Shown piece after piece: positions 3,001 to 50,227 of a stretch of DNA of 64,000 nt (its first letter is position 1; the number at the start of each line of letters is the position of its first letter). Origin of the DNA: Bugula neritina. Taxonomy: Eukaryota; Animalia; Bryozoa. A program made the translations under genes and the position numbers. The notes beneath the pieces were generated by a model that had not been told where the DNA came from, ran no database searches, and saw only the letters and a program-made list of their open reading frames with translations. Location of the stretch: positions 13,215,675 to 13,279,674 of the forward strand of contig OZ037768.1 in assembly GCA_964035545.1 (NCBI GenBank). The letters are read 5' to 3'.

Positions 3001-6000
3001 AAAGCATAAAGTATAACTGAAAAAAAATAATTAAAACTGCTTGAGAGTTCTTTCATTGGGTGTTCCATCAGAATCGCGCGTGTTTAAAAAAATTGATTAT
3101 ATAAACAACTAGCTAATAAAAGGCCAAAAAATATATTAAGAAAACTATTGTCTACCCATTGAGCAGTTATCTGAAAGATAATAGTAAATACAAAATATAT
3201 TATAGCATAACTTCAAAGAGACATACAGAGCTTAAAGTTGGGCAACAATAAAAAGCATACATTACATTTCCCAAGTCTGCACAGAAATGGTACCTTTAAA
3301 AGCCAGGAGTGATGCAATACTATGCACAATATCAGAGTACAGACTGCTGAGCAAATCTCTGTCTGCTAGACTCAGTACCTGGCTCCAGGAAACTACCAGA
3401 GTGTTGAGCAGACCTCTAATTCCCCGTACAATCTCCTCCTTGCTAACACAACAAATAACAACAAGCTTATTTTAAAAGAGTTAATGCAGCAATATTTCAA
3501 ATTAAAAAAGCAATGTTCAAATCAAGAGAATAGCATCTATGTACGCAAAGTATATAATTCAGCACAATACACATTTCATTTGTATAATTTATACAATGAG
3601 TACCTAAATTTGAATAAACAGCAAAAGAATCAGTGTTATCAAAAGACTAAAATACATTCAATATTCAATTATTTCAACATCAAGATTTCTAAATACTTAC
3701 TTAATTTTTTTCAAAATTGTGTTGCATAAATTGAATCTTTAAAAAATCTTGTAACAAATCAAACTTTTAAAGTGACTCACCTTTCAGCAGGAAATGATGT
3801 CATCCAGTAAAGATAGCAGTGAGCCACAATCTGGCAGCAAAACCGAAGGTCACTGATTCTACTTGAAGTCACCTGGGCAGCTGTTGTGGCGCTTCTTGCA
3901 ATACTTTCAGTGATTATTAAAACTTTTGCAAAAGTTACTGCTGCCATTGCAGAAGGTAGGCATTTAATGAGATCTCCAAGACAGCAGATCATACTCTACA
4001 AGAAAACTAGACATTGTAAATAGACATCAATGTAGGATTGGGAAGTAACAAATGCAGCATAATGAGCTCTTTAAACACTAGTATAGTTAGTATAAAGTGA
4101 AAATTAGAAAATATTTCATAAAAATAAGAGCATAAGTTCAAAAGCTGCAATCTTCAATATTAATTTGTTATCATATAACTTTGAAAACGATGATTGATTT
4201 AGGAGTTGCAGGCAAAAGTAGGTTTAGAAACGAAACTAAATAGTGATGACTCCCACTTACTAAACTATAATGTGTAGTACAAGTTTAAACTAGCATGTAG
4301 GCCTTCTCTGTGTGCCAGAATTATGGCAACTACTGTTTCATGCTTTGCTTAATACAAATGATGCTGCCACACATAATCTGATATTCTGAGTCAGGAAATT
4401 ACCTCACACGCCTCATTAGTCTGGATTTTAATGATAATCCATTCAGTCAACTGTTTATTCATCGCCAAGGAGACCAAAGACTGTGAGCTCATAGATGAAA
4501 GTAACAAATCAAATAGTGAGGAGACAAGGCTACACTCCGTTAGAGTTCTGAGCGATGACTCAGCCAGAGACTCTAGTAGCATCATGGAGAGCTGCATAGA
4601 ATGAGTTGCGGGTGATTGAGAGAGAGCCCGTAGTAGAGAGGTTACAGCAGTACGCATGTCCTCATCTTCACTATTTATAAGCAAAACACATATCAACATT
4701 TAAATACAAACTAACAATAAAAACTGATATTGGAAACACAGTTACACATTTCTAGGCTATAAAATACTATCAGCATATTGAGTATTTTTTATTCGGCAAA
4801 GCATCTGATAAGGATATTCGTTCATTACAATCTTATTGTAGTGTCAGATTTAAATCTATGAAAATATATAAAAAAAATTATTGCATGAAATGGCCTGCTG
4901 TTGGTGAACAAGCATACGCCTCAACACTGGTAAGTCAAATAATCTGCTGCATAGACATTTTTCAGAACAAACTCAAAATTTACCTTCTTTTAAGCTTAAA
5001 TCACACAAAGTTTCACGAGCTTCACAGTTATAAGAGTTTATATTCAGATGGTACACACCTGTTTAGACTATGTAGTGTCAACACTTCAATACAAGCCATC
5101 AGGTTATAGACAGGGATGTGAGAGACCTTGTCTATCCACGAAGATGTTGTAAACAGCTCAGCCAGAAACAGACTCGTACTCTGCACACAACAAAACTGAA
5201 TCAGTATACATCACAGCTACACTAATGGTACATCACAGCTACACTAATAGCACATCACAGCTACACTAATAGTATATCACAGCTACACTGATAGCACATC
5301 ACAGCTACACTAATAGTACATCACAGCTACACTAATAGTATATCACAGCTACACTAATAGTATATCACAGCTACACTGATAGCACATCACAGCTACACTA
5401 ATAGTACATCACAGCTACACTAATAGTATATCACAGCTACACTAATAGTACATCACAGCTACACTAATAGCACATCACAGCTACACTAATAGTATATCAC
5501 AGCTACACTGATAGCACATCACAGCTACACTAATAGTACATCACAGTTACACTAATAGTATATCACAGCTACACTAATAGTACATCACAGCTACACTAAC
5601 AGTATATCACAGCTACACTAATAGTACATCACAGCTACACTAACAGTATATCACAGCTACACTAATGGTACATCACAGCTACACTAATAGTATATCACAG
5701 CTACACTGATAGTATATCACAGCTACACTAATGGTATATCACAGCTACACTAAGAGTATATTACAGCTACACTAATAGTACATCACAGCTACACTAATAG
5801 TATATCACAGCTACATTAATAGTATATCACAGCTACACTAATAGTATATCACAGCTACACTGATAGTATATCACAGCTACACTGATAGTACATCACAGCT
5901 ACACTAACAGTATATCACAGCTACACTAAGAGTACACAATTTGCTACTAATTTCGGAAAAACTGAATGAAACTTATCTGTTGGCTGACAGCATAATTTCT

Positions 6001-24596: not shown

Positions 24597-26342
24597 TTAG
24601 TTATACATTACGCAGTGCTCGGTGTGGTAATATCGAAAACAATTAGGAACACACAAGCCTACTAAACAGTCTGGGCAGAAGGTTCTGACTTTGCGAGTTC
24701 TAGGCTTGCCCACTAAAGCACCGGTAGAGCAGACTGCGCATGTTTTTCTTTTGCCGTCAGCTACAGTCTCAGCGAAATGTCTCTCCACCAACCTGGCGAC
24801 AGCTAACTGACTACATGAAGGCTGCCCGGCCTTTCTGTAAGGTTCTCTGTACTCGCCAACCAGTTGCAACACTAGCTTTGTCACAAACTCGTAATGACTC
24901 ATGGTCCTACGTGACCGATTTGGGTTATGTTTATACAAAAGGTATGCATTAGTGGCAGTTCTATCAATCAGGTGAAAGATGATTTTTTTCCAAAATCTTG
25001 TGATTTTCCTTTCAGCTGAGTAACAATTTGTCAACTTATCCGACAAAGCTACTCCTCCCATGTGTTTACTGTACTCATCAACAACTCCGGGGAAGACAAT
25101 CTTGCGCCCACGCTTGTTTTTGATCTCAACTGGAACTGCAGATGAACAAGTAGAGAGGAGCAGAACTGGTTTATTTGCCATCCAGTTAATAGCCATGAGC
25201 TTACTTTTCCTCGCTATTTTGTATTCATCTCTCGACAGTTTTTCTTTCATAAATGAAGGTAAATATTTGCAATTTGGTTCAACAGTTCCTGTAACATAAG
25301 TACCTTGTTCGAGAAATGTTTCACACAGTTTTACACTTGTGTAGTGGCTATCAACATATAAATGGTGATTCTTGTGATGGAGAGAAGACATGAGGTCAGC
25401 ACAGACGTCATGTGAATGTCCAGACTCACTGTAGGTGCCTGAAGTGAGGTGGTACTTTGTGTGGTAACAGTAGCCGGTTACAGAATCACACAGGTTATAC
25501 TCTTTTGGACTCCACTCGGGTTGCTCCTTCATATTAGTGTATTTTACAGAAGAGCGTCTACTTTTCAAGTTTACAATAGTCTCATCAATTGAAATTGTTC
25601 TACCAAGATTGTAGTTTCTTTTCCAGGACTTGTTGAAGTGATCTAGCACAGACCGAAACTTATGTGAAGGATCATAATTCAGTGAGCTACGGGGATGTGC
25701 CTCATCGTTGTTGGCTACATGAAACACCCGTGAAAGGCTCCGGTAAGTACTTGCCCTAAAAATACTGGCAAAGAAAGGTACATCAAGGTTTGCATAAGAT
25801 TTTGTCCAGTAACTTTCACAGCTAGGCATCTGTACTAGCCCCATGTTCATAGTCACACCAATAAACGCTTTTAGTTGGGGCAAGGTTACTTCACCTAACT
25901 GTCTTATAACTGCATTTGGGTGAGTAGTTGGCTGCTTGAGAAGCATCTCTCTGTATCTGTTTGTTTCAACTAGTATGTGGTACCACAAATCTATCCCAGA
26001 GTCATCTGCAGGCATGAAAAACTGATCAAAGTAATCGATGGGATTAGAAGAGTTTGGGCAATAAACTGGCTCTGAATCAGCAACAAACTGCCGAATTTCA
26101 GGAGTGTAGTCTTTGTGAACATCATTGATCATCTGCCAGTCTTTACTATCAGATATTGCATTGTGTAAACTACTACCACCAGACGTATCTGCTATACTAT
26201 CGGAGCTACTGACTCTAGCAGACGAGGTAGTACAGCTCAACCACCAATCCTCGTAATCCTCACTGTCAAAGTCTTCTTGCTGAATGTCACTTCCACTTTC
26301 CAGATCAGAATCGTCTGTCAACCTCCTCTTTCTATCAGTCAT
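24597..26342 (-). CDS. piggyBac transposase-derived protein (PGBD4-like), intact ORF of about 581 aa, probably catalytically dead
   Basis: Acidic N-terminus, SIDETIV (D1), LYVDSHYTS (D2), MGGVALSD (D3 replaced by A), WKKIIFHLID and a C-terminal Cys-rich domain CAVC..CPDC..LC..CFRYYH. The first ATG is at 26342; the ORF track starts at an upstream GTG. Confidence 0.9.
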   Translation of the reverse strand: MTDRKRRLTDDSDLESGSDIQQEDFDSEDYEDWWLSCTTSSARVSSSDSIADTSGGSSLHNAISDSKDWQMINDVHKDYTPEIRQFVADSEPVYCPNSSNPIDYFDQFFMPADDSGIDLWYHILVETNRYREMLLKQPTTHPNAVIRQLGEVTLPQLKAFIGVTMNMGLVQMPSCESYWTKSYANLDVPFFASIFRASTYRSLSRVFHVANNDEAHPRSSLNYDPSHKFRSVLDHFNKSWKRNYNLGRTISIDETIVNLKSRRSSVKYTNMKEQPEWSPKEYNLCDSVTGYCYHTKYHLTSGTYSESGHSHDVCADLMSSLHHKNHHLYVDSHYTSVKLCETFLEQGTYVTGTVEPNCKYLPSFMKEKLSRDEYKIARKSKLMAINWMANKPVLLLSTCSSAVPVEIKNKRGRKIVFPGVVDEYSKHMGGVALSDKLTNCYSAERKITRFWKKIIFHLIDRTATNAYLLYKHNPNRSRRTMSHYEFVTKLVLQLVGEYREPYRKAGQPSCSQLAVARLVERHFAETVADGKRKTCAVCSTGALVGKPRTRKVRTFCPDCLVGLCVPNCFRYYHTEHCVMYN

Positions 26343-28491
26343 GGCTGATAAATTCAAGAATTGAGATTGCACAAATGGGTTTAATTACCTGAGCATGAGT
26401 AAATGTTAAAATTAAATCTTGTTTATATTTCTCAAAATAGAGTACAATAATCAGTGGCTATTTACTACTGCCCTGTGATAATACTTGAGTGTTGAATTAA
26501 CCCTGTATAGGAAAGGACTGCACTAGCAGAATTGAATAACCATGTGCACAGAGCATTTTTATTGGCTAATAATTTGCTGTGAGTTTATATGTGGTAAAAA
26601 GTTAGATGCAGCACAAAGTTTAAATTTAATAAATACAGTGGTACATAGGTCAGAGTTCGGCTTTAGATTTTAGAATTTGATCAATGATAGTATACAAATA
26701 CTGCACTCAGTGACCCCTAACTTTGTTTTGCATTTAGCGATTCTCTCTTGCTGATGTGCAAATATGAATGAATAACTATTTTATATGTCTTTGAATAAAA
26801 TTTAGTCTATTAAACCATGTAAACTTAGCCAATCAGAGACAGGTATTAGCTTGAATATCTCACTGTTATAACTTATATAAGATTCTGAAAGTTCAGCTGC
26901 GAAATGTATGCTTCTAAAAAATAGTTGTGCAACTTTTGCCATGTGAATTATTTAATCTTATATCTTAAGTTTATGAGCCTTGGGCTCATTTTATTATTAT
27001 TTCTAAAACAAATGTTTGAAAATAGCAATTAAAATCTACATGCCTAAAATATCAACTGGATAAGCTTGCTGGGATAACACACAACACATTTGCTTTGCTA
27101 TTATAACATGAATGAGTTCATTATTATTACTATATTATTTGACAGTTGGGGGATGGTGTAACACTCATAGACTTGGTGCATAACTCTGATAGGTTAGCTG
27201 AGTAATATATGCACTTGTTTCCATTTCAGATACAAGCTATCTGGGTTATTGTATGAAGCTATTAGTGTAAGTTCTGAGTGAAAGATTCGGGCTATTTTCT
27301 CAACTATGACAATTTATATACTCGATGTGTATGAAGGTTCACTATGATCATTGAATTAAGTTTGGCCGGTACGTTAACTCGTGATATTTTCTACATACAC
27401 ATAAAAAAAATAAAAATAAAACAAAATAAAACATAAAATATATGAGCTACCTACTAAGCTACTAGCTTTGTCAAACCTTATATTTGCTGAAACGTTTAGT
27501 CATATATTACATTAATAAAAACTTATGCTAATATGGAGAGCTGCATATACCATAAATTTATATATTTTATGTTGTTACTGCACAAGAGGTGAGTAAGACA
27601 GTTGCATTGGTATATAGATAAAATATAGCAGACAACCACTAAATTATGAAATGGTCAATTTATTTGCCAGCAACATGGAGCTAAAAATCGTAGGTGTGTT
27701 TACTTACTTTTAATCTATATCATGAAGAATTAATGTTTCGATATAAAGACACATTTGCTTCAAGTCATCCAAAAGACGTCCAAAGTGTTGGCTTTAAAAG
27801 CAAAGAAGTTAAAGTCTAGTCAATTCATTCTGTTGCAATGATTTTGCCGCAACTTCAAATTATTCAATAGTTAATATTTGGTAAATGTAGTTTATTCTTT
27901 TAGCTCACATATATAGTTCAGTTTTAAACTTAAGTGATATGAATAGATGCTGAGGTAAGTCAGAAGTCTGCATGTGCTTCTGTAATGCATGTAGTCTTGT
28001 GTAAAAATTATAATTGCCATAGTTATCTATTGACTGACAAGCAGCCATGCAGCCATGCAGTTGACTAGAGTATACCTTAGTGTTCCACTGCATCTACTGT
28101 ATCCTAAATGTATTGTGGGTTTTATAGAAAACATGATTTTATGCATATATCTGTAAAGGTTAGACAATGCTAACATGTTGAACTACATTTATGCTTCATC
28201 TAACGATACGCTATACGCTATACATTAGATATTGCACTGATCTATATGTTACAGTTTTATCTGCTTCCTTATGCTTCATTTTTAGTTATATTCTTTTGTA
28301 AGTTTAGAAGATTATTTACTATCACTTGCAGCAGGTATAATGACTAGCCACTAACAACATTGTGTTTTAGGAAGACTTCTAATGCAACTTTAATTTTCAA
28401 ACAAATATTTGCTTTATTATTTTTTAGTGAAAATATATTTTTCCAGACTGTATATTTATTCACAAAATATGAAAGATATTTGCTTAAAAAT

Positions 28492-33962: not shown

Positions 33963-34669
33963 TTAAGCAAATTATTGTAAGCATTTATCAATGCGTGACA
34001 AAATAAAACCTTCCGTCTTGTTGCATTGTTAGGTTTGCCAATAAAACACAATACTATTTCCAAAGTAAGCTCACTATTTTTTGGCAGATGTTTACCTTCT
34101 AAAAGTTGGGATAAGCCTGTGGCTTCTGTAAAGATGGTTGATGTAAGATAAAATATATCTTTATAACTGAGAAGCCTTTATAGTACAGAATTGTTGCTTG
34201 CTAACAAGAAAAACAATGTATTGTCATTTTTATATTTTTTTATTAATTCACAGGCATTTTTAAAATAACTCACACACAGTACTTGACACCATACAAAAAT
34301 TTTAATATCTAAATAAGGTTTTACTTACAAGAAAATGTAACCAACTTTAGCAAAGTGAGTTTTTATATAAAAAAAATCTTTCAACAGCACTTCAATGGAA
34401 TAATCCTTATAGAAATCTGAAAGATTGAGCACATAATGATTTGATTCAAAATCAAATGTTTAAGTACACCTTGCTTGTCTCTTCTGGTTGGTCTCAACTT
34501 CATTCAATATGATGAGTAGCGCCAAACTTGATAGCAAGAAATTCCCACCAAAACAAACTCTGATCCGCTGTGTTTTATAGAACAACACTGCCATTACCTA
34601 TAAAAAAGCATCATAACGGTTGAATTTGATATTCCCACAAGATGTTGCAAGGGCTATGCTTGGAGGAAT

Positions 34670-34731
34670 GAAACTCAGCACAAACAAATTTCTCATCATA
34701 GAAGCAGAAACTTGAGCATAATCACAATTTC
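34670..34731 (-). ncRNA. Box C/D snoRNA-like unit, family A, duplicated copy with shortened 5' part
   Basis: Minus strand: gaaatt GTGATTA tgctcaagttt CTGC ttct ATGATGA gaaatttgtttgtg CTGA gtttc. Confidence 0.55.
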
Positions 34732-34900
34732 AATATCAGGTGGACAGCAAGTGATGTATCAGATGCATACCAGTAATCTAGTATCTTCTAATAACTTCTG
34801 CCAGCAGACTAGAGATCGTGGTTACCTACAACACAGAGGAATATTCTAGTTCACATGATATCTAACTGATGAACAATTGTGACTGCAGACTCTACCAGTC

Positions 34901-34959
34901 AACTCAGAGTTACATCTCCTCATTATGTTCAGAGACCTAGATTTGTGCTCATCACTGTT
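34901..34959 (-). ncRNA. Box C/D snoRNA-like unit, family B, duplicated copy
   Basis: Minus strand: aaca GTGATGA gcacaaatctaggtct CTGA acata ATGAGGA gatgtaact CTGA gtt. Confidence 0.75.
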
Positions 34960-35979
34960 GGTAGGGAATGGACTGGACAAAACATAAAAAGCTATTTTTT
35001 CAAAGCAAGCCTAAAAATGATGTATACTATAATTAGAAAATAATCGAAATATTTGGGAAAATAACCATATGTTACTGCATTATTTACATGGTAAAAATAA
35101 TTTTGAAATTTTATCAGTTGGGCTAACCTTGAGTTTATCTCCCTATCCGTCTTGATTACATTCGCCAACTATTCTGCAACATTGAAAGTAAGTCAAAGCT
35201 AGAAAATATGCTGCAGCTGAAACTACTTTTACATAAACACAAATCAATATTGAAAATAAATTAGATATCATTTGACTGGGTCAAGTTTTACGTAGCTCAA
35301 ATCAACTAATAGAACACAGAAATCTTAGATCAAACATTAAACATGTAGTAACCAGTAAACAACATGTCTCCTATTGCTGTGCAACTTATATTAGCTTACA
35401 AATTGAATGTTGCTTGAGAAACACCTCAGAACAAGTGTCATGTTTTCATCATAGAAGGACTCCAGTTGTTGAAATGTGCACTAGAAAGTTTCTCGCCACC
35501 AAGAAGAACTTAGTGATAATTTTATAGCCATTATTTTGACAACCTCTGCGCTTGCAAAATAGAGCTTTTCTAGCAAAGGAACTGGTTAGAGCGACTTTTA
35601 GTGAGTTGATATTCTTGCAACAGTCATTGCATGGAATGTTAAAATTCATCGTTGTGTTTACTGTTTAAACATCTGTATATTTTAATTTTAGAGAAAAGAA
35701 CTTCTAGAACTACTCATGCTAGTCAGCGTACTGAAGAAAAAGCTGAGAATTTAGCTAAAACAACTAAAATGAGCTTGAACAATTCAGCAGCTGTAGTCCT
35801 TGAGGTTATTAGATAATTTGCATAGTTATTAACTAGTATCAATGTATTTGTTAACTAATTTATGATGAGCAGTTGTATTGTATGTAAATAAGCTAGCAAT
35901 TCAACTAGACATGCAAAGATATCAAAATAATAGGGCTGTTGTTGACACTTTGGTTGTAAAGTAGAGAGAGCGACAATGC

Positions 35980-40300: not shown

Positions 40301-41375
40301 GACTATATCAGCATATAAATAAATTTGAGAATGTCTTAAACAGTATTAAAATATTTAGTAAAGTAACAGGCTTGTCAATCAACATTGTCTCACAAATTTT
40401 GTGCCAAGAGGTTTTAAAAGAAACTGAGATTTGGAGGACTGCAATGCTTTTGTGTTCCATATGTGTTCAATGTTTTTATGACATGAAAAATATCCTCCAA
40501 AGCCTTGTTAATTTGTCAAATTTTAATTATTTGGTATTTTAGGAAAAACTTATGTGTGAACAGACACCAAAAAATCTAAAGCAACATAAAATAGTTTCAA
40601 AAATAATGAAATTAGGTAAGCTCATAAGGTGGACTTGCATACTTTCATCATCTTGACTTACTCTCATCATTCCATTCATAGGGTGCCAGAACACCACTCT
40701 GGTCTACTTTAGCGAATGAGTAAATCACATGGGTACACAGCTGAGTTGGAATCTCATTGGGTACCATCTTCTGAACTCCGGGCCTGTATTGGGCCCAATT
40801 TTCAAAGTAACACACCATATGGTAACCACATGCTACCTAAATTAGTATCAACATTGTAGTCATTATATTATTAACATGTACATTTTGCCAGTCTGTGCTA
40901 CTCCTAGTAAAGCTGAATGTGAAACCTATGAGGTTGAGTGAGTTTGCAAACTGTCCTACAGTTATACTTCTACACAACCTAATTCAACAGCACAATTCCG
41001 AAACTATGATATGATGCTTATTCATATTTAAGATGGTTTTATAAATTATCATGTAAAGTATTCTGAAATAGTGCAAAAATTTGTATGTTACCTGTATTGT
41101 TGAAACATGTGGTTAATAGATATGGAAGCAGTGTTATTCTTAAGATTTGGACTAGCAAAATTATTATATATATTTATTTTTGACGTCGAAAAACATTGTG
41201 AAGTTTTTCAGATAACTTTTACATAGCAAAACATTGTTCAGATAGACTGAACATATTTTATTTGTTATTGAATGTTGCGTAATCCTAATAGAAGCACATC
41301 CCATGAAAAGAGTTCAACAGTTCTTACCTGTGCACATAGCACCAGTAGTATGGTGCTAACCAATGTCCCAGCCAT
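37396..41375 (-). CDS. GH18 gene 3: chitinase-like protein (catalytic E->Q, no linker or CBM14)
   Basis: Nine intact exons: 41328-41375, 40662-40836, 39941-40044, 39610-39762 ([12 protein letters not shown]), 39302-39426, 38231-38333, 37942-38085, 37645-37779 and 37396-37551 (..[12 protein letters not shown]). Confidence 0.9.
38525..38876. mobile_element. Foldback-type non-autonomous element with 15-bp tandem subterminal repeats
   Basis: (ggtaataatggcaca)n on the left, (tgtgccattattacc)n on the right, and a G/T-rich centre. Degenerate 8-bp target-site duplication cttagtct/tttggtct versus the empty paralog site cttggtct at about 30482. Confidence 0.8.
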
Positions 41376-42806
41376 AGCAGTTCAATTGAACAGCCTTAAT
41401 GAAGCTATTAATTTAGTCTTGCGCTAATAATACATACATGCTGTGAACTACTACACATGTTTTATCCAAAATAGCCTTTTGAAAACATTAACCTGCATTA
41501 AGTTTTACATAATGATATTAACAAATGAGGTTTGATGTTAATCCTTATCTTAAAAGATTTGTGCCACACCTTAAGACCATGTTTCATTTATTTGAAATTT
41601 AAGCCAGAAGCAATATAAAAGAAACTTGAAGATGTAAAATATGCTCAAGAGCAATGTGCAGCATCATCATGAATATGTTGGTTTAAAGTTTTTGTTATTA
41701 AAATCTGTGTAGAATGGTAACTGCTAACGGTAATTGTCAAAATTGACATAATTATTAAAAAAGCTTTTTAATAGCATTCCTCCTGATCATGAATGTTTCT
41801 TTGTTCTTAACATTTGTGTAGCGGGCAACTGCAAAGTGTAGTTATCATAAAAAAACTTTTTTATCACCCTTCTTCAACTGCCTAGTATTTGTACCATTGA
41901 ATTTAACACCTCACTAAGGGCAGCGAGCCTATAAGCATCAATGTACCAATCAGCCAATTACTAGCCACAAAACTCTCAAATAAAATATTCATTTTCACTG
42001 GTTACGATTTCTCAATATTTAAAGTGAAATCATAGGCACATTCAACATTAAGCAAAGTATGTTAAACAATTTGACACAGGACAAAACAAAACCCTATGGT
42101 TGTTGCATGGCTAGCTTCGCAGACACCAATAAAACACAATAACACTCCCCAAGTGAGCTCACGATTGTTTTGGCAGATGTTTACCTTCTAGAGGTTGGGC
42201 ACAAGCCTGTAGCTTCTACATAAATGGTTGACAATAGATCAAATATATCTTTATAACCAAGTAGTGTTGACAGTACAGAATTGTTATTTGCTGGCAAGAG
42301 AAACAAGGTATTGTCATTCTTATATTTTTTTTATTAGTTTACTTTCATTTTTTAAAAAAATTTTTAATTCACCAGTTAAAATATTTATAAAAATACACTG
42401 TGCACATATTACTTAACATCATCGAGTGGCTAAAATGTATACAGAAATTTTGATATTTAAATAGTTTTACTAAATGAGAAAATGTAATGAATATTTGCAA
42501 AATGACAAAAAAATGTTTCAACAGCTCTTCAACAAAGTAATTCCTATAGAAATCTGAAAGATTGAGCACATAATGATTTGATTCAAAATCAAATGCTGCA
42601 CTACACCTTGCTTGTCTCTTCTGGTTGGTCTTAACTTCATCCAATATGATGAGTATTGCCAAACTTGATAGCAAGAAATTCCCACCAAAACAAACTCTGA
42701 TCCGCTGTGTTTTATAGAACCAACACTGCCAATACCTACAAAAAGCATCAAAACAGTTGTGTTTGATATTCTCACAAGATGTTGCAAGGGCAATGCTTGG
42801 AGGAAT

Positions 42807-42876
42807 GAAACTCAGCATTAACAAATGTCTCATCATAGAAGCAGAAACTTGAGCATAATAAAACCATCACAGTTTC
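42807..42876 (-). ncRNA. Box C/D snoRNA-like unit, family A (A1)
   Basis: gaaact GTGATGG ttttattatgctcaagttt CTGC ttct ATGATGA gacatttgttaatg CTGA gtttc; 5-bp terminal stem; D box 74 nt from the 3' splice site. Confidence 0.75.
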
Positions 42877-43074
42877 AATATCAGGTGGACAGAATATGAT
42901 TTATCATGTACTTACAAGTATTCCGGTGTTTTTAACAGGTTCCACCAGCAGACTAGCACAGCATTAACCAACGCCAACTCGCTGCATTTCATAATGTAGC
43001 CCTGCAAAAAACCAGTCAATAGCCTTTCAAGTGATATTCTGGCAAGATGTAACAACTGGCAAAACTTGAATACT

Positions 43075-43144
43075 GAAACTCAGCATAAACAAATGTTTCA
43101 TCATAGAAACAGAAACTTGAGCATAATAAGACCATCACAGTTCC
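43075..43144 (-). ncRNA. Box C/D snoRNA-like unit, family A (A2)
   Basis: GTGATGG..ttatgctcaagttt CTGT..ATGATGA..CTGA; D box 76 nt from the 3' splice site. Confidence 0.75.
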
Positions 43145-43330
43145 AATATTAGGTGGATAGAATATGATTTGTTATGTACTTACAAGTATTCTGGTGTCTT
43201 CAACAGGTTCCACCAGCAGACTAGCACAGCTAACTTGCTGCATTTCATAATGTAGTCCTGCAAAAAACCAGTCAATAGCCTTTCAAGTGATATTCTGGCA
43301 AGATGTAACAACTGGCAAAACTTGAATACT

Positions 43331-43400
43331 GAAACTCAGCATAAACAAATGTTTCATCATAGAAACAGAAACTTGAGCATAATAAGACCATCATAGTTTT
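43331..43400 (-). ncRNA. Box C/D snoRNA-like unit, family A (A3)
   Basis: ATGATGG..ttatgctcaagttt CTGT..ATGATGA..CTGA; D box 76 nt from the 3' splice site. Confidence 0.75.
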
Positions 43401-43570
43401 ACTAAAGGGTTGATAAAAAGATGAATTATCAGATGCATACCAGTATTCTAGTATTTTCCAACAGTTTCTGCCAGCAGACTAGAGATTGTGGTTACCTACA
43501 ACACAGCAGAATATTCTAGTTCACATGATGCGTAACTGATGATAAATTGTGACTGCAGACTCTACCAGTT

Positions 43571-43629
43571 AACTCAGAGTTACATCTCCTCATTAAATTC
43601 AGAGACCTAGATTTGTGCTCATCACTGTT
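43571..43629 (-). ncRNA. Box C/D snoRNA-like unit, family B (B2)
   Basis: aaca GTGATGA gcacaaatctaggtct CTGA attta ATGAGGA gatgtaact CTGA gtt; all four boxes and an aac/gtt stem; D box 76 nt from the 3' splice site. Confidence 0.82.
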
Positions 43630-44129
43630 GGTAGGGAATGGACTGGACAAACCATAAAAAGCTATTTTTTCAAAACATGCCTAAAAACGATGTATACTAT
43701 AATTAGAAAATGATGGAAAGAATTGGGAAAAGAACCATATGTTACTGCATTATTTACATGGTAAAAAGAATTTTGAAATTTTATCAGTTAGGCTAACCTT
43801 GAGTTTATCTCCCATCTGTGTTGATTATATTCGCCAACTATTCTGCAACATGTATGTATAAATGAAAGTAAGTCAAAGCTAGAAAATATGTTACAGCTGA
43901 AACTACTTTTACATGAACACAACTCGATCTCCAAAATAACTATGTTTACAAAAAATACAACTAGATCTCAAAAAGAGATATTATTCAAGTGGGCCAAGTT
44001 TTACGTAGTTCAAGTCAACTAATAGAACACAGAAATTTTAGATCAAGCAGTAAACATGTACTTGTAGTAAACGGCATGTCTCGGATTGTTGTGCAACTTA
44101 GATTAGCTTACAAATTGAACAGTGCCCGA

Positions 44130-44204
44130 GAAACAACTCAGAATCAGTGTCATGTTTTCATCATAAAAACAGAAACTTGAGCATAATATTACCATCATGG
44201 TTTC
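44130..44204 (-). ncRNA. Box C/D snoRNA-like unit, family A (A4)
   Basis: gaaacc ATGATGG taatattatgctcaagttt CTGT tttt ATGATGA aaacatgacactgatt CTGA gttgtttc. The D' guide is conserved and the D guide has diverged. No clear 3' splice site at the usual spacing. Confidence 0.75.
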
Positions 44205-44543
44205 TCAGGGCAACATGAAGGAGCAAGGCACATCACAAACTTAAAGCTAGTGAATTTAAACTCGTACACACCAAAGGTTCAATAGACAGTGTTTATGTGA
44301 CCAATACTTGCTTAGATTTGGGAGTGATGTGCTTTGCCCATACAAGACTATAGGAAAAAATGCTTACCCTTTCGTAATTAGCAGTAGCAGCATCAATAAT
44401 CTGCCCCGTTGAATATTTTAGTCAAGTATGCAATTAGGTAAAGACTCCAGATGGTTTGATACTGCAACTGAAATAAGAAAACTACTATTGAACATGCATC
44501 TAACAATGTTCAATTATATGCACAGGCTAAATTACAACAACTC

Positions 44544-44602
44544 AACTCAGAACTACATTTCCTCACTGTAATCGGAGACCTAGATTTATATTCATCATTG
44601 TT
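44544..44602 (-). ncRNA. Box C/D snoRNA-like unit, family B (B3)
   Basis: aaca ATGATGA atataaatctaggtct CCGA ttaca GTGAGGA aatgtagtt CTGA gtt; D box 77 nt from the 3' splice site. Confidence 0.8.
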
Positions 44603-44856
44603 GGGTAGAAGCTATAGTTGAGGCAACTGACCGCCAATGCAATACAACAAAATACATCAAATTACTTTTTACCAATTGTGCAACACATACCGAATACAGT
44701 CGAGATAAGTGGAGGGCAAATAACCATTCTTCCAACAGAATCTAGCTGCAGATTTCCCATAAGACAAGGCAACACTTTCCTTGTTCTGCAAGTAGTGAAT
44801 CTTGGTTGAGCAGATACAATAGAATTGATAGCAATGCAAGAGCGTTTCATGGGAAA

Positions 44857-44924
44857 AATTCAGTTCCATAAGTTGCGTATCATCAATACAGAGCAGCGAC
44901 TTGAGTACATGACACATCATATCA
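44857..44924 (-). ncRNA. Box C/D snoRNA-like unit, divergent family A-like (A5)
   Basis: ATGATGT gtcatgtactcaagtcg CTGC tctgtat TGATGA tacgcaacttatggaa CTGA; D box 72 nt from the 3' splice site. Confidence 0.65.
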
Positions 44925-45119
44925 CAAAGAACAAGGCAATGTATTATACATTACGACACCAGACACATTTCGTAACACAATTTTATATGCTGACAATACT
45001 TACATGGTGAACACTGAGAATACTTGAAGAAGCAGTTCATCTGAAATCATAATATTTGAAATTATTGTTGGTCAATATAATGTGATTCTTCCTAGATATT
45101 TTGAGAACATATGTTCACT

Positions 45120-45179
45120 AACTCAGATAGTTGTGTCTCCATAAAGATTCAGAGACCTAGATTATATTTCATCATCGAT
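45120..45179 (-). ncRNA. Box C/D snoRNA-like unit, family B (B4)
   Basis: ATGATGA aatataatctaggtct CTGA atcttt ATGGAGA cacaactat CTGA gtt; D box 80 nt from the 3' splice site. Confidence 0.78.
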
Positions 45180-45900
45180 GGCATAAAATTGGCATATTTG
45201 ATAAATAGGAATTACCTGATCTTGCAGATGATTACCAGTGTCAGGAAGTAGGCGAGGTTAGCAATCAGAAAGAAGACACAGAAGAAGCCCAGGCACTCTT
45301 ACTGCAATGAGTGTAGGAAGCCATAAGTCTACAATAAGCAGATATCATTAAGCATAACAATAATGTATTATCTGACGGTATTAAATAATAATACACATAA
45401 CTTGACTAGAAACATAGGACTCAGCATGCAAAATTTATGAAGTAAATTACACAGCACAAATTTAACAACTTTAAAGGTGTAGCCTTGCGTAATTGGAAGT
45501 ACAGGCTTCCAGATAATGACATTTTTACCGGTTTATGACAGAATTTATTTCTACAACACATTTCATTTTATAATGTTCACAACTATGTTTTGTAAAATAT
45601 AAATGTTCAGTACGTTAATGGCAGAATTTCTACAACTAGGAGGGTAAAAGAGAAATTACCTTAATCTTCGTTGAACAGGAAAGACTGGGACTTACACAGA
45701 GGAAACACAAGATTAAAAGGCAGAAATTCAACAGGACATTTTAAACACAAATATATTTAAAATTACTAGAGTGGTACGTTTGTGACTTACAATGCATATC
45801 ACAAAATCAGTCATAGAAAAGATGCATCATTTTAATTTCACCATAGTCAATCGATTAAAATAACATTACTTCAATGAATACAAATATAAGTAAACTATGT

Positions 45901-48900
45901 TTAAGCCTCAGCAGCAGCAGCAACTTCAGCTTGTGCCACTCCAGCTTTCTTTTTATTTCTTCTTCTGCTAGACTTAGAATTGACTGGCTGCGCAAGTAGA
46001 GCCTGAAACAGATTTATTGACAATAAATATAAGTAATTTTATAACAAGCAACATACTCAGGGAGCTGAAAAGCCTACAGCACGACCACTACTAAATCTAA
46101 CATCACTAAAATCTAGAGAAAAATATAAATAACTAGATGAAAATTTTAATGATGAGCAATGCTTTAGCATGGAAACAAACAAACACACATCAGAAAATAA
46201 TGTACAGGGTGAGCATTGAAACTGCCAAAAGCCTAGAAAAACAATGTTAATGCCAATGCCATGACTTACAAGGCAAGCAAATGGAACATACCTTGAGCTC
46301 TTCATTTTCTATCTGGTGTTCGCTTTCATAAATTGAGAGATCTAGAGGTACGCCGGTAATTTTCATGGGGCCATTGGGCATCATCAACACAGTGAACTTT
46401 ATTTGTGCGACAACTTCACCTATAAAAAAGAATTGCACAAGATACAGAAACCTAAACCTGCTTGCTCAGTGTAGTAGAGATTCTCTAGAACTGCAGAGGC
46501 AGAATAACCACAGTAAACTGATTACACAAGTGTTCAAGAGCACTTAATTTACTATCAATTTACTAGGAAGTGGAAGCAAACATATTCAAATCTAGTAATA
46601 CTAAAACACAAGATGACTAGATTATATTACCATCTTTTTCATATAAAACAGGAAACGGTTCAACAATGGCATGTTTGACGCATTCTACAACTCCCATCTT
46701 TGCCTTGGATTCGTCAGAGAATGCCCTGCAATAAAGCATGGAAAAGTTTAATATAGCTAACACTGCTTCAGAGCTACATGACAGAATTGAGACTTCCATA
46801 GGAGTGACTGACTTACCTAAGAGTAAAAGGCATGGTATTGAAGCTGTTCTCCACTTCACTCAAAAATGCTACAACACAATTATTCAATTTCGGTAGACAT
46901 CAAACTTAACTAACAACAACGTAAACTTTCTTCTTGTTAACCATGTAACCTATAAGACTACCCTGTAACTGCTTACCTCTGGAGGCTTTCATTTTTAGTT
47001 GATATATCAGATCTGCTTTGCGTTTATATACAGTAGTTCTAGTGTCTTTCTCTTTTGCCTTGCCTTCTCCTGAACTCACCAAGATGTCTAGCGCATACAC
47101 TTCATGCACATCAAACTCGCACTTTGGGTGCTCTTTTCTGAAATGTTGTAGTAGGATTGATTGCTACGTAAGGATGTGGATACTTGGCAACAAGCACAGT
47201 AATTTTTTTAAACAACTTCATTTAAGGTAAAACTTATTGCCGATAAATTTTAATTAATTTGAATGACATTATGCAAAATTTTACTGCAATGCATATTTTC
47301 AACAAAAAATAATAAATGATGACAGTCATGTTTCATTTTAACGCTTTTGATTTGTGAACACATGTAATGTAGTAAACAATTTATTTCTGATTTTACACAG
47401 AAAAACCCCCTGAAAATCAAAATTAGGCCAGCTTTTAAGCAATCGCACATTGACCACGTTACACCCCATATGCGGTTTATAGAAGTATGCCATTTTTGTC
47501 AAAATTTTACCAACCAAGTAAATCGAATGTTCAGTACCTTTGTGTGTCCGTGGGATTTAAAATAATAGCCTTTTCACCATCAATCTTATGTTGCTGCAGC
47601 TGATGTGAAAGCATGCCTTCCACAGGTTTACAGCCGTATTCTTCAACAACTTTTTGTATTGTGTCTGTTACCTGTTTGGACATAAATCAGTTCTAAATAT
47701 TAGTCTACCACAAAAGAATTTGAATGGAGCAGAAGAGCTACTTATAGTAGCACATTCTTTGAATAACGAATTACATGATTGAAACAGCAACAGCGATTAA
47801 CAGTAAAGACATCAACCTACCATATAATTATCATTTCCCCCTTTGAGAAGACGAAGAGCTGCTTCAGCGGCAAAGTGTGCGGCTAAAATAACATCGGCAT
47901 TTCTACCACTGACTTTATTGCTTGCTGCAGCCCCAACTACTAGTGAATGCGCAACGACGGCGGGAAATCCATCTAAGTGCGCGCCCAGGTCACTGAAATT
48001 ATAAACAAATTGATTAATGGAAAAGCTCATGCATGCTATTACTAAAGCAGTGTTACTGTAATCATGCCAGCAGATACTATTTGGAGCTACCCTCACTTTT
48101 CAAGACCAAATATAATTTCCATTAAAAATACAATAAATAACAAATCATGACAAAATTTTGCAACAAAATTTATATCACCAAATATTTTGTAAAATTGAAT
48201 TCCTAAAAATTACATAAAATTTGAATTTTATTGTTTGTTACATAAATGCTGAGCATAACCTTTATAATGGAAATTATTTTTGATCTTATGCTGCAACTGT
48301 ACTGCATTTTCAAGACAAGAAAAGACAACTTCTAATAACTAAAGCAAAACCAGCCTTAGGATTTTTTGTATTTTGAATATAAGCTAACAAATTTCTTACA
48401 TTTTCACAAGATCCCCATCTTTGAGAACGATGTCCGCATCATTTTTAAGAGGTGAATAATGGCAGACACAGTTATTCACTGAGATACATGTGGGGAAAGC
48501 AATGCCTGCAACATATCAATAAATCTTTGTAAACAGTGGAAAACAAGTTGCTTTTTAAAGCACAATGTTATATTCATGCAGGCGGGGTGGGTGTGGGGGT
48601 GTGATCGATTTTGGATGCTGCATTGTACCAACAAGTTGAATGATCAAGCAAGAAAACTTGCTTAAACTACTAACTTTGGTTATCTGAGATGGGGGATATA
48701 GCTCAACAGCAAATTCAAAGATTGAAAAGACTGGTGATTAAAGAACTTCTGAAAAATTTATCAAGGAATATTTTACAGTTTGCACAACCTTAACTTTATA
48801 ATGGAGGCAATAAAAACCTAAGTGGATGTAAGTCTAAATATAAGGCATTTAAAATTCATACAAACCTTTTTTTATTTCTTTATCTTTACGGTATATTTTC

Positions 48901-50227
48901 GAGGTTCCCTCATTTAGTTTAAGATCTCCATACATACAAAGTTCAAGAACTTTAGCTCCAGAAACACACTTGTCAGCAAGCTCTTTGACAAGATCTAAGA
49001 ATACATAGCAATAGCTATTTGTAAGACATGACTTACATATGGTGCTAGTGGGCGAAAATGCAGCAAAAATTACAACACATAAAACAAACAGACCGGTCAA
49101 ACATTTTATCTTAAACAGCAAAATAACACTTTGAATTATTGTATTGCTATCTTTCAAACCGGTTGGGATGTAACATATTAACTGGCAATAAATTGTAACT
49201 ACAAATAACAGTGACATTGACAAGTTTCCACTAGTCCCACAGTAACATTATTGGTATAACTACAAGTTGCAATCAATTATAAATCTAGTATATGATAATG
49301 ATTGAATCACATTTATGTGATTTACTCTTCTAATTTACTCAGTAATTGTAATTCAAATTGTAAACTAAATTACAATCACTTATAATGAGTGATTGAGATT
49401 TGATGGTGAGTCTCCGAGGTAGGTGCAGTAAATATAATGGAGAAATTGAGAAAAGCCTGTGTTCTAGATTAAAAGTGTAACAAAAGAAGTTATCTTCTTA
49501 CAAGAATTTCAACCGTGCTCCAAACCAAAATTTAATAATAAAATTTTGGCTTTCTTAATGTTTTTACTACTGCTCTTAAGTGGAGTCTCATTGAACATTG
49601 TCATCGAAAGCTAAACTTTTATGGTATAATTACTACTAGTAGTAGCAAGAGGAATTCAGTGAACTCGAGACAAGTACTGTCACTGTGACCTGTGTGTACA
49701 TCTTACATGATCTAATTCCACCACAATTTGAATTAAATTTTAATATCATTAACTCTAGAAGTAAAACTAAAACTAAAAGTAGATTCAAATGGAATTGCAA
49801 GCCGAAGGTCACAATTAATTATTAAAGCACCAATTCGTGAATTACTCAACATAGTCATAAGTAATAAGTTAAAGTTAAAAGTAAAAACGCTAACATTTCG
49901 CTACATTTACAATGGACGCACTAGCTCAAAGTCTAACTGAAAGTGTAAGTCTTCTTCAGTCCAGAGGCCGAGGAAACTTAAATTGAAATATTTAAGCAAT
50001 GTAATGGAATCCGAAGTGATACTGATTCAATTTGAATTTCATTAAACTTTGAGTCAATATGATAATTTTATGTTAGAATATTAAGTACAGCTAGCTTATG
50101 CACAAATCAATTTACAAATGAAAAATTAAAAACAATACTTACTGTTGACTATTTCTGCAACCATTTTATACTTGGTAACAACAACATCTTCAGCAATGGT
50201 TTGCTCTTCTTCTTCGCGGTCCGCCAT
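45901..50227 (-). CDS. PA2G4: Proliferation-associated protein 2G4 (EBP1)
   Basis: Ten exons: 50143-50227 ([21 protein letters not shown]), 48866-48994, 48400-48505 ([19 protein letters not shown]), 47821-47992 (DLGAHLDGF), 47538-47671 (EGMLSHQL), 46977-47137, about 46816-46868, about 46630-46725, 46292-46419 and 45901-46002 (basic tail, TAA). Confidence 0.96.
49421..49603. repeat. Dispersed repeat, inverted copy of 1020-1208
   Basis: Reverse-complement similarity to 1020-1208. Confidence 0.7.

What the first reader, a model, noticed from the sequence alone, without database searches (positions are those of the whole stretch)
42807..45179. Hidden array of eight intronic box C/D snoRNA-like RNAs in two guide families with unassigned targets
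Seen: on the minus strand, eight 60-75 nt units each carry C, D', C' and D boxes, and most have a terminal stem. Seven have the D box 72-80 nt upstream of a 3' splice site, one unit per intron, between short exons with no conserved ORF. Within each family the boxes and the D'-adjacent guide are conserved while spacers and D guides drift. Family A guide: TTATGCTCAAGTTT (divergent member TGTACTCAAGTCG). Family B guide: AATCTAGGTCT. Established: this spacing and layout is typical of intron-encoded C/D snoRNAs in non-coding hosts (GAS5/UHG type), and multi-copy orphan arrays are known mainly from mammals (SNORD115/116, SNORD113/114). Inference: a lineage-specific amplified snoRNA locus. I could not match the predicted targets (AAACUUGAGCAU; AGACCUAGAUU) to conserved rRNA or snRNA sites from memory, so they may be orphan guides or hit variable rRNA segments. 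One unverified candidate for family B is the 28S 3'-terminal segment after GUAGACGAC.
Basis: partly seen in the sequence, partly recalled or inferred. Interest (0 to 1): 0.88.

Follow-up and report, generated by a model that had tools for sequence, protein, structure and literature searches.

The report
Non-coding host of eight snoRNAs
This is an ordinary kind of animal gene that makes no protein and releases eight small box C/D guide RNAs from its introns; they are not orphans, because both guide families match this species' own 28S ribosomal RNA, at two spots absent from the fly methylation map I checked.

Summary
On the minus strand, 42812-45175, there are eight box C/D units of 52-61 nt from C box to D box. 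There is one per intron, and each D box lies 74-82 nt from the 3' splice site. RNA contigs of a close relative show two of the predicted GT..AG introns spliced to the base, plus a third junction as a loose end. Several exons have stops in all three frames, so the host is non-coding. It lies directly downstream of PA2G4/EBP1. The "orphan" reading is not supported. I took this genome's own rDNA and scanned the guides against it. Family A (four intact copies plus one diverged) pairs over 14 bp with 28S 1050-1063 and predicts Um1054; 1-3 of 2000 shuffles do as well. Both targets are identical in all 17-18 assembled rDNA copies and lie in variable rRNA columns. The Drosophila RiboMethSeq table has no site at either place. 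No Rfam family reaches threshold. A truncated paralogous copy lies at 33963-35456. Earlier notes of this scan describe similar snoRNA hosts elsewhere in this genome. Verdict: a new member of a known kind (UHG/GAS5-type host).

The parts
42310..45290 (-). Non-coding snoRNA host gene, about 10 short exons. The 5' end is inferred and the 3' end follows an AATAAA at 42335-42330.
   Evidence: GT..AG exon model read. Stops in all three frames of exons E4, E5, E7 and E10. No Pfam hit for the only long ORF. Spliced contigs of a relative.
45266..45287 (-). Pyrimidine-rich tract, a possible 5'TOP/TCT-type transcription start of the host. This is inference only.
   Evidence: Sequence. The high-depth PA2G4 3'UTR contig ends at 45304-45315. 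The start is not mapped.
45123..45175 (-). B1, box C/D snoRNA of family B in intron 1. The D' guide predicts 28S Cm3710.
   Evidence: Intron 1 (45215-45041) is spliced in RNA contigs.
44860..44920 (-). Ax, a diverged family A member in intron 2, with weakened pairing to the same 28S site (9 Watson-Crick + 1 G:U + 1 mismatch). Probably decaying.
   Evidence: No relative's contig at 90% likeness or more over 44807-44973.
44547..44598 (-). B2, box C/D snoRNA of family B in intron 3. Its D' box is CCGA here and CTGA in the relative.
   Evidence: Intron 3 (44690-44468) is spliced in RNA contigs, and the difference at 44574 is listed.
44138..44198 (-). A1, box C/D snoRNA of family A, with a 7-bp terminal stem. 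The D' guide predicts 28S Um1054.
43574..43625 (-). B3, box C/D snoRNA of family B.
43336..43394 (-). A2, box C/D snoRNA of family A.
   Evidence: The loose end at 43440 continues into an E8-like exon.
43080..43138 (-). A3, box C/D snoRNA of family A, 99% identical to A2.
42812..42870 (-). A4, box C/D snoRNA of family A.
42705..43418 (-). Three tandem copies (spacing 268 and 256 nt) of an intron-plus-exon module, each carrying one family A snoRNA.
   Evidence: Repeat family D1 and self-BLAST.
33963..35456 (-). Truncated paralogous copy of the 3' half of the host gene, 77-82% identical. It holds an intact B copy (34955-34904), an A copy lacking its C box (about 34725-34675) and a 5'-cut A1-like remnant (about 35456-35416). 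It has no host exon 1 or promoter region.

Best explanation
A non-coding, spliced host gene of the UHG/GAS5 type lies directly downstream of PA2G4/EBP1 on the same strand. Each of its eight snoRNA-bearing introns holds one box C/D snoRNA at the position that favours splicing-coupled snoRNP assembly. After splicing and debranching, exonucleases would trim each intron back to the snoRNP, and the exons would be thrown away. The snoRNAs act through the guide upstream of the D' box. Family A (A1-A4, and weakly Ax) pairs with 28S rRNA 1050-1063 and directs fibrillarin to 2'-O-methylate U1054. Family B (B1-B3) pairs with 28S 3707-3717 and directs methylation of C3710 in the 3'-terminal domain. The D-side guides are drifting and probably idle; in family B that spacer is only 9 nt. 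The locus grew by tandem duplication of intron-plus-exon modules, and a truncated copy was left 8.7 kb away. Shown here: the box architecture, the positions in the introns, splicing at two to three junctions in a relative, the lack of an ORF, and complementarity to this genome's own 28S. Inferred: release of discrete small RNAs, fibrillarin binding, methylation at the two sites, and an independent promoter.
For: Boxes and families. Sub-threshold Rfam hits are nearly all C/D-box families on the minus strand. [quoted passage not shown] Contigs of a relative, about 93% identical, in two RNA-Seq runs skip exactly 45215-45041 and 44690-44468 (GT..AG on the minus strand), and a loose end at 43440 runs into an E8-like exon. 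Exons E4, E5, E7 and E10 have stops in all frames and the one long ORF has no Pfam hit. The rDNA of the same genome was located by pattern search, fetched, and its rRNA genes delimited by Rfam. Family A pairs 13 Watson-Crick + 1 G:U contiguously from the base next to the D' box; 1-3 of 2000 shuffled guides do as well. Family B pairs 10 Watson-Crick bp from position 2; 38-106 of 2000 shuffles do as well. In both families the invariant part of the guide is the paired part. Both targets are identical in all 17-18 assembled rDNA copies. Neither family occurs anywhere else in the 216-Mb genome.
Against: There is no direct evidence for discrete 60-75 nt RNAs or for methylation. The only RNA data are assembled contigs from a relative in libraries the tool flags as 'RNA? 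(a guess)'. Most of those contigs are unspliced, and the two joints have only 22-23 letters on the short side. The family B duplex is at the lower limit (10 bp) and 2-5% of shuffles match it. Family A has a non-canonical D' box (CUGU/CUGC) and a C box ending in G. Both predicted sites lie in variable rRNA columns. Drosophila Nm sites are reported to be absent from expansion segments, and the Drosophila table has no site at either equivalent place (PMC11014333). The transcription start is not mapped: one contig of run X2 spans 45216-45329 and overlaps the PA2G4 3'UTR contig, so read-through from PA2G4 is not excluded.
Confidence: 0.75

Rival explanations
1. One or both families, most plausibly B, are orphan or non-rRNA guides. 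On this reading the 28S match is a coincidence and the real target is an snRNA, a tRNA, an mRNA or nothing, as for SNORD115/116.
For: The family B duplex is only 10 bp, and 38-106 of 2000 shuffled guides find an equal match in rRNA. The predicted sites are absent from the Drosophila map. No Rfam family is matched.
Against: The family A match is 14 bp, anchored at the D' box, and is matched by 1-3 of 2000 shuffles. In both families the conserved guide core coincides with the paired stretch. The targets are invariant in all rDNA copies. snRNAs and tRNAs of this genome were not scanned.
Confidence: 0.12
2. The host is not an independent gene. The snoRNA introns belong to a read-through or alternative 3' extension of PA2G4/EBP1, so snoRNA output is coupled to the PA2G4 promoter and the spliced product is an NMD-prone PA2G4 isoform.
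For: The PA2G4 stop codon is at about 45905 and its 3'UTR contig runs to 45304-45315. That is only about 15-25 nt from the pyrimidine tract taken as the host start. In run X2 a contig spans 45216-45329 at a depth (93) close to that of the UTR contig (107).
Against: In run X1 the PA2G4 3'UTR contig has depth 904 against about 120-165 over the host, and the contigs break at 45304-45329. A pyrimidine-rich tract typical of snoRNA-host and ribosomal-protein gene starts sits at 45287-45266. Contigs cannot show starts or ends.
Confidence: 0.2
3. The units are decayed or never-functional snoRNA-like repeats carried along by a tandem duplication, with no stable RNA product.
For: Ax, the A copy at about 34725 and the remnant at about 35456 are clearly damaged. 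There is no small-RNA evidence.
Against: Seven units keep all four boxes and an invariant guide while spacers and introns drift, even between copies only 80% identical. The position relative to the 3' splice site is held at 74-82 nt. None of the 13 listed differences between the relative and the window over 45015-45241 falls inside B1, which occupies 23% of that stretch.
Confidence: 0.05

Closest known systems
Drosophila Uhg (U snoRNA host gene) lncRNAs
   Same: Non-coding spliced hosts with one snoRNA per intron and several near-identical isoforms of the same guide. In the fly, 42% of the non-intergenic C/D snoRNAs sit in seven such lncRNAs, and many sites have a-d isoforms (PMC11014333).
   Different: There is no sequence relationship: no Rfam family reaches threshold. 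The two predicted sites have no counterpart in the fly table. Only two guide specificities are carried. The position directly behind PA2G4 is specific to this locus.
Mammalian GAS5 / UHG (SNHG1) / SNHG family
   Same: Short poorly conserved exons without an ORF, snoRNAs at a fixed distance from the acceptor site, and a likely pyrimidine-rich start.
   Different: The mammalian hosts mostly carry different guides in each intron. Here eight introns carry two specificities. The 5'TOP start is only inferred.
SNORD115/SNORD116 and SNORD113/114 arrays
   Same: Tandem repetition of a snoRNA-plus-exon unit inside a non-coding host.
   Different: Those are orphan guides in imprinted mammalian loci with tens of copies. 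Here both families have a match in the organism's own 28S, and only three modules are tandem.
SNORD21 / fly snoRNA:CD1 (28S Gm789 in the fly; human G1303 from memory)
   Same: It guides the nearest known Nm site. By my alignment, which rests on numbering recalled from memory and checked for consistency against the fly table, that site is G1063 here, the last pair of the family A duplex.
   Different: Family A places U1054, 9 nt upstream, at the fifth position from D'. It is not the same site and there is no detectable homology.
Rfam SNORD52 (RF00276), SNORD31 (RF00089), SNORD36 (RF00049)
   Same: These are the best sub-threshold hits to family B units. The SNORD52 consensus guide looks superficially similar to the B guide.
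   Different: Scores are 22-24 bits against gathering scores of 30-45. The B guide finds no pairing of 9 bp or more anywhere in 28S that would correspond to the SNORD52 target.

Membership tests
Box C/D snoRNA (fibrillarin-type 2'-O-methylation guide) | C box (RUGAUGA) near the 5' end and D box (CUGA) near the 3' end, 50-100 nt apart | tested here: met
   All eight units have both, 52-61 nt from C start to D end. In family A the C box ends in G; in Ax it is AUGAUGU.
Box C/D snoRNA (fibrillarin-type 2'-O-methylation guide) | Short terminal stem bringing the C and D boxes together | tested here: inconclusive
   Clear for A1 (7 bp), A3, A4, A2, B2 and B3 (4-8 bp; and reading). Weak or absent for B1 and Ax.
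Box C/D snoRNA (fibrillarin-type 2'-O-methylation guide) | Internal D' and C' boxes | tested here: met
   B: CUGA/CCGA plus UGAGGA/UGGAGA. A: CUGU/CUGC (degenerate) plus AUGAUGA.
Box C/D snoRNA (fibrillarin-type 2'-O-methylation guide) | At least 10 bp of complementarity to a target RNA ending next to D or D', placing one nucleotide at the fifth position | tested here: met
   A: 14 bp with 28S 1050-1063, giving U1054; 1-3 of 2000 shuffles. B: 10-11 bp with 28S 3707-3717, giving C3710; 38-106 of 2000 shuffles, so marginal.
Box C/D snoRNA (fibrillarin-type 2'-O-methylation guide) | Accumulates as a discrete small RNA bound by fibrillarin, Nop56, Nop58 and Snu13; the target is methylated | not testable with these tools
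   Only assembled contigs of a relative were available. They cannot show RNA ends or abundance.
UHG/GAS5-type non-coding snoRNA host gene | Spliced polymerase II transcript with one snoRNA per intron | tested here: met
   Introns 1 and 3 are spliced to the base and a third junction appears as a loose end, all in a relative's RNA contigs. The other junctions are predicted only.
UHG/GAS5-type non-coding snoRNA host gene | No conserved ORF in the spliced exons | tested here: met
   Checked exon by exon: E4, E5, E7 and E10 have stops in all three frames. No Pfam hit. The joined exon model was not built or searched.
UHG/GAS5-type non-coding snoRNA host gene | 5'TOP-type transcription start | tested here: inconclusive
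   A pyrimidine tract lies at 45287-45266, but the start is not mapped and read-through from PA2G4 is possible.
Any curated Rfam snoRNA family | Score at or above the family's gathering threshold | tested here: not met
   No hits at gathering in the whole window. The best is 23.6 bits against 40 for SNORD31.
Orphan snoRNA array (SNORD115/116 type) | No complementarity to rRNA or snRNA at a canonical guide position | tested here: not met
   Both families pair with this genome's own 28S at the D' guide.

The most novel reading that the evidence does not exclude
The two families are lineage-specific guides that track variable 28S segments. Family B would then direct a ribose methylation, or act as a folding or processing chaperone, in the 3'-terminal domain only 84 nt from the 28S 3' end. 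Family A would act at the junction of the ES7-side helix and the conserved core. I know of no Nm site at either place in model organisms. That would make the locus a simple system for watching a guide and its rRNA target co-evolve, with copy number amplified because this locus is the only source of both guides.
Probability: 0.4. Interest if true: 0.45.

Novelty: new member of a known kind. Interest (0 to 1): 0.3.

Why it matters
It adds an unannotated non-coding gene and eight snoRNAs, plus three paralogous remnants, to this genome. It replaces the "orphan" label with two concrete predictions that one RiboMeth-seq experiment can test: 28S Um1054 and Cm3710. If confirmed, these would be lineage-specific methylations in variable parts of 28S, one of them unusually close to the 3' end. 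The design itself is well known from flies and mammals: a non-coding host, one guide per intron and duplicated isoforms. A specialist would therefore not be surprised.

Tried and rejected
Rfam at gathering thresholds over the whole window found nothing. The permissive scan gave only sub-threshold generic C/D hits. The apparent resemblance of family B to SNORD52 was rejected, because the guide does not pair with the SNORD52-type site in this 28S.

The genome search with Rfam families (LSU, SSU) failed three times. I found the rDNA with a short conserved 18S pattern instead. A sarcin-ricin-loop pattern gave no exact hit.

The D-side guides of all units found nothing better than G:U-rich 9-11 bp matches and are taken as idle. 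A second, weaker family A match at 28S 30-42 (11 Watson-Crick + 1 G:U + 1 mismatch) was noted and ranked below the 1050-1063 match.

The genomic hits to the guide cores outside the window that I read (five of the eight family A hits and all four family B hits) lack C/D boxes. Three of the family B hits are copies of an unrelated repeat. The three family A hits on C5, C6 and C9 were not fetched or read, but whole-unit BLAST found both families only at this locus.

Two metagenome scans found no family A match and ten family B pattern matches, none with snoRNA architecture; I take those as chance.

I could not name the organism. A piggyBac ORF points loosely to arthropod-rich clusters and an exact-protein look-up was blank.

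snRNAs, tRNAs and SL RNA were not scanned as targets.

Full report
**1. Observation.**

Reading 42600-45400 on the minus strand and listing every C-box-like heptamer gives eight units. Their C-box start and D-box end are:
- B1: 45175-45123
- Ax: 44920-44860
- B2: 44598-44547
- A1: 44198-44138
- B3: 43625-43574
- A2: 43394-43336
- A3: 43138-43080
- A4: 42870-42812

Each unit has C, D', C' and D boxes in the right order and spacing. Alignments show two families.

In family A (A1-A4) the stretch from the guide core through the D' box is invariant. The spacer before the D box varies. In family B (B1-B3) the 12 nt before the D' box are invariant, while the 5 nt upstream of that and the 9-nt D-side spacer vary. 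Ax is a diverged relative of family A.

Rfam finds no family at gathering score in the whole window. With permissive settings, 20 of the 28 weak hits in 42000-46000 are C/D-box families, all on the minus strand.

**2. Host gene.**

GT..AG sites place each unit in its own intron. The D box lies 74-82 nt from the acceptor: B1 82, Ax 74, B2 79, A1 77, B3 78, A2 78, A3 78, A4 76 (and reading). [quoted passage not shown]

One search for sequencing runs found no RNA run of the organism itself. It found two RNA-Seq libraries labelled "symbiont metagenome" that hold a relative about 93% identical, and one DNA run.

Laying their contigs on 41300-46300 gave two joints. One skips exactly 45215-45041 and the other exactly 44690-44468. 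These are my predicted introns 1 and 3, with GT..AG on the minus strand. A 41-letter loose end at 43440, the predicted donor of the A2 intron, reads as a diverged copy of the next exon.

Three caveats apply. These are contigs of a relative. The short sides of the joints are 22-23 letters. Most contigs are unspliced.

I looked at the exons one by one; the joined model was neither built nor searched. E4, E5, E7 and the last exon have stops in all three frames. The only long ORF starts inside snoRNA A4 and has no Pfam hit. An AATAAA at 42335-42330 is conserved in the paralogue.

The upstream neighbour on the same strand is PA2G4/EBP1. Its exon at 46906-47109 matches PA2G4 chains in the PDB at E about 4e-12. 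Its 3'UTR contig ends at 45304-45315. A pyrimidine tract at 45287-45266 could be a TOP-type start. Whether the host has its own start or is a read-through of PA2G4 remains open.

**3. Targets.**

A short 18S pattern located the rDNA array on another contig of the same genome. I fetched one unit, and Rfam delimited 18S, 5.8S and 28S. I then scanned all guides, requiring contiguous pairing that starts within two bases of the box.

The family A D' guide pairs with 28S 1050-1063 (13 Watson-Crick + 1 G:U) starting at the base next to D'. This puts U1054 at the fifth position. Only 1-3 of 2000 shuffled guides do as well.

The family B D' guide pairs with 28S 3707-3716, or 3707-3717 with a G:U in B1, from guide position 2. 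This puts C3710 at the fifth position, 84 nt from the 28S 3' end. Of 2000 shuffles, 38-106 do as well, so this assignment is plausible but not secure.

Both target strings are identical in all 17-18 assembled rDNA copies. Ax keeps a weakened match in the same register. The D-side guides find nothing convincing.

The guides are therefore not orphans.

**4. What kind of sites.**

Aligning the two 28S stretches to the Rfam eukaryotic LSU model shows that both targets lie in lower-case (variable) consensus columns next to strongly conserved blocks.

I used the Drosophila RiboMethSeq table (PMC11014333) together with site numbering recalled from memory. The fly set Gm789/Am796/Am799/Cm813 is offset by a constant 514 from human G1303/A1310/A1313/C1327. 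On that basis the nearest known site is the equivalent of G1063 here. Nothing is listed at the equivalent of U1054, and nothing in the last few hundred nucleotides of 28S.

That paper also states that fly Nm sites are absent from expansion segments. This is a mild argument against the predicted sites, or else a sign that they are lineage-specific. The mapping to yeast and human numbering rests on my memory of those sequences and is a lead, not a test.

**5. Spread and history.**

Exact guide patterns and BLAST of whole units against the 216-Mb genome find both families only at this locus.

Within the locus, a 256-268 nt module of intron plus exon is present three times. A2 and A3 are 99% identical.

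A truncated paralogue of the 3' half of the gene lies at 33963-35456 and is 77-82% identical. It starts in the middle of an A1-like unit. It has one intact B copy, 96% identical to B3, and one A copy whose C box is deleted. It lacks the host's first exons and is probably a dead duplicate. Whether B4 is expressed is unknown.

Metagenome scans gave no relatives.

**6. Comparison and verdict.**

The architecture is that of Drosophila Uhg genes and mammalian GAS5/UHG/SNHG hosts, including several isoforms of one guide in successive introns (PMC11014333). It is not an orphan array of the SNORD115/116 kind. It belongs to no curated Rfam family.

Earlier unchecked notes of this scan describe several other non-coding or protein-coding multi-snoRNA hosts in the same genome, including an amplified one behind RPL5. 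The pattern therefore seems common in this genome.

I class the finding as a new member of a known kind with modest interest. Its useful output is two testable predictions: 28S Um1054 (confident) and Cm3710 (tentative). The organism was not identified; I can say only that it is an invertebrate-like animal genome.

Noticed in passing
window 33963-35456 (minus): Truncated paralogous copy of the 3' half of the snoRNA host gene, with one intact family B unit, one family A unit lacking its C box and a half A1-like unit.
   Followed up: partly
window about 45905-49250 (minus): PA2G4/EBP1 gene directly upstream of the snoRNA host on the same strand. In the relative's RNA contigs its 3'UTR has far higher depth (904) than the host (about 120-165).
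   Followed up: partly
window 24597-26372 (minus): Uninterrupted 591-aa piggyBac-type transposase ORF (DDE_Tnp_1_7 clusters in the ESM Atlas, score 0.98).
   Followed up: partly
G000:C6:7113696-7273927: The rDNA array is assembled as two blocks in opposite orientation: six units on the plus strand, then eight on the minus strand, about 12-13 kb each. Further copies lie on C9 and C135. This could be a real palindromic arrangement or an assembly artefact.
   Followed up: no
L014 ITS1 499-509 (L014:2894-2904): A stretch of ITS1 resembles the 28S 3'-terminal target of family B and also pairs with the B guide (10-11 bp, 2-3 of them G:U). It may be coincidence.
   Followed up: no
L020, L021, L023 (G000 C6, C7, C9): A dispersed repeat family that happens to contain the 14-mer of the family B guide plus D' box, but has no C/D architecture.
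   Followed up: partly
window 5158-5258 (minus): Three tandem 22-nt units, each containing a C-box-like GTGATGT; picked up by the crude C/D scan. Probably a simple tandem repeat.
   Followed up: no
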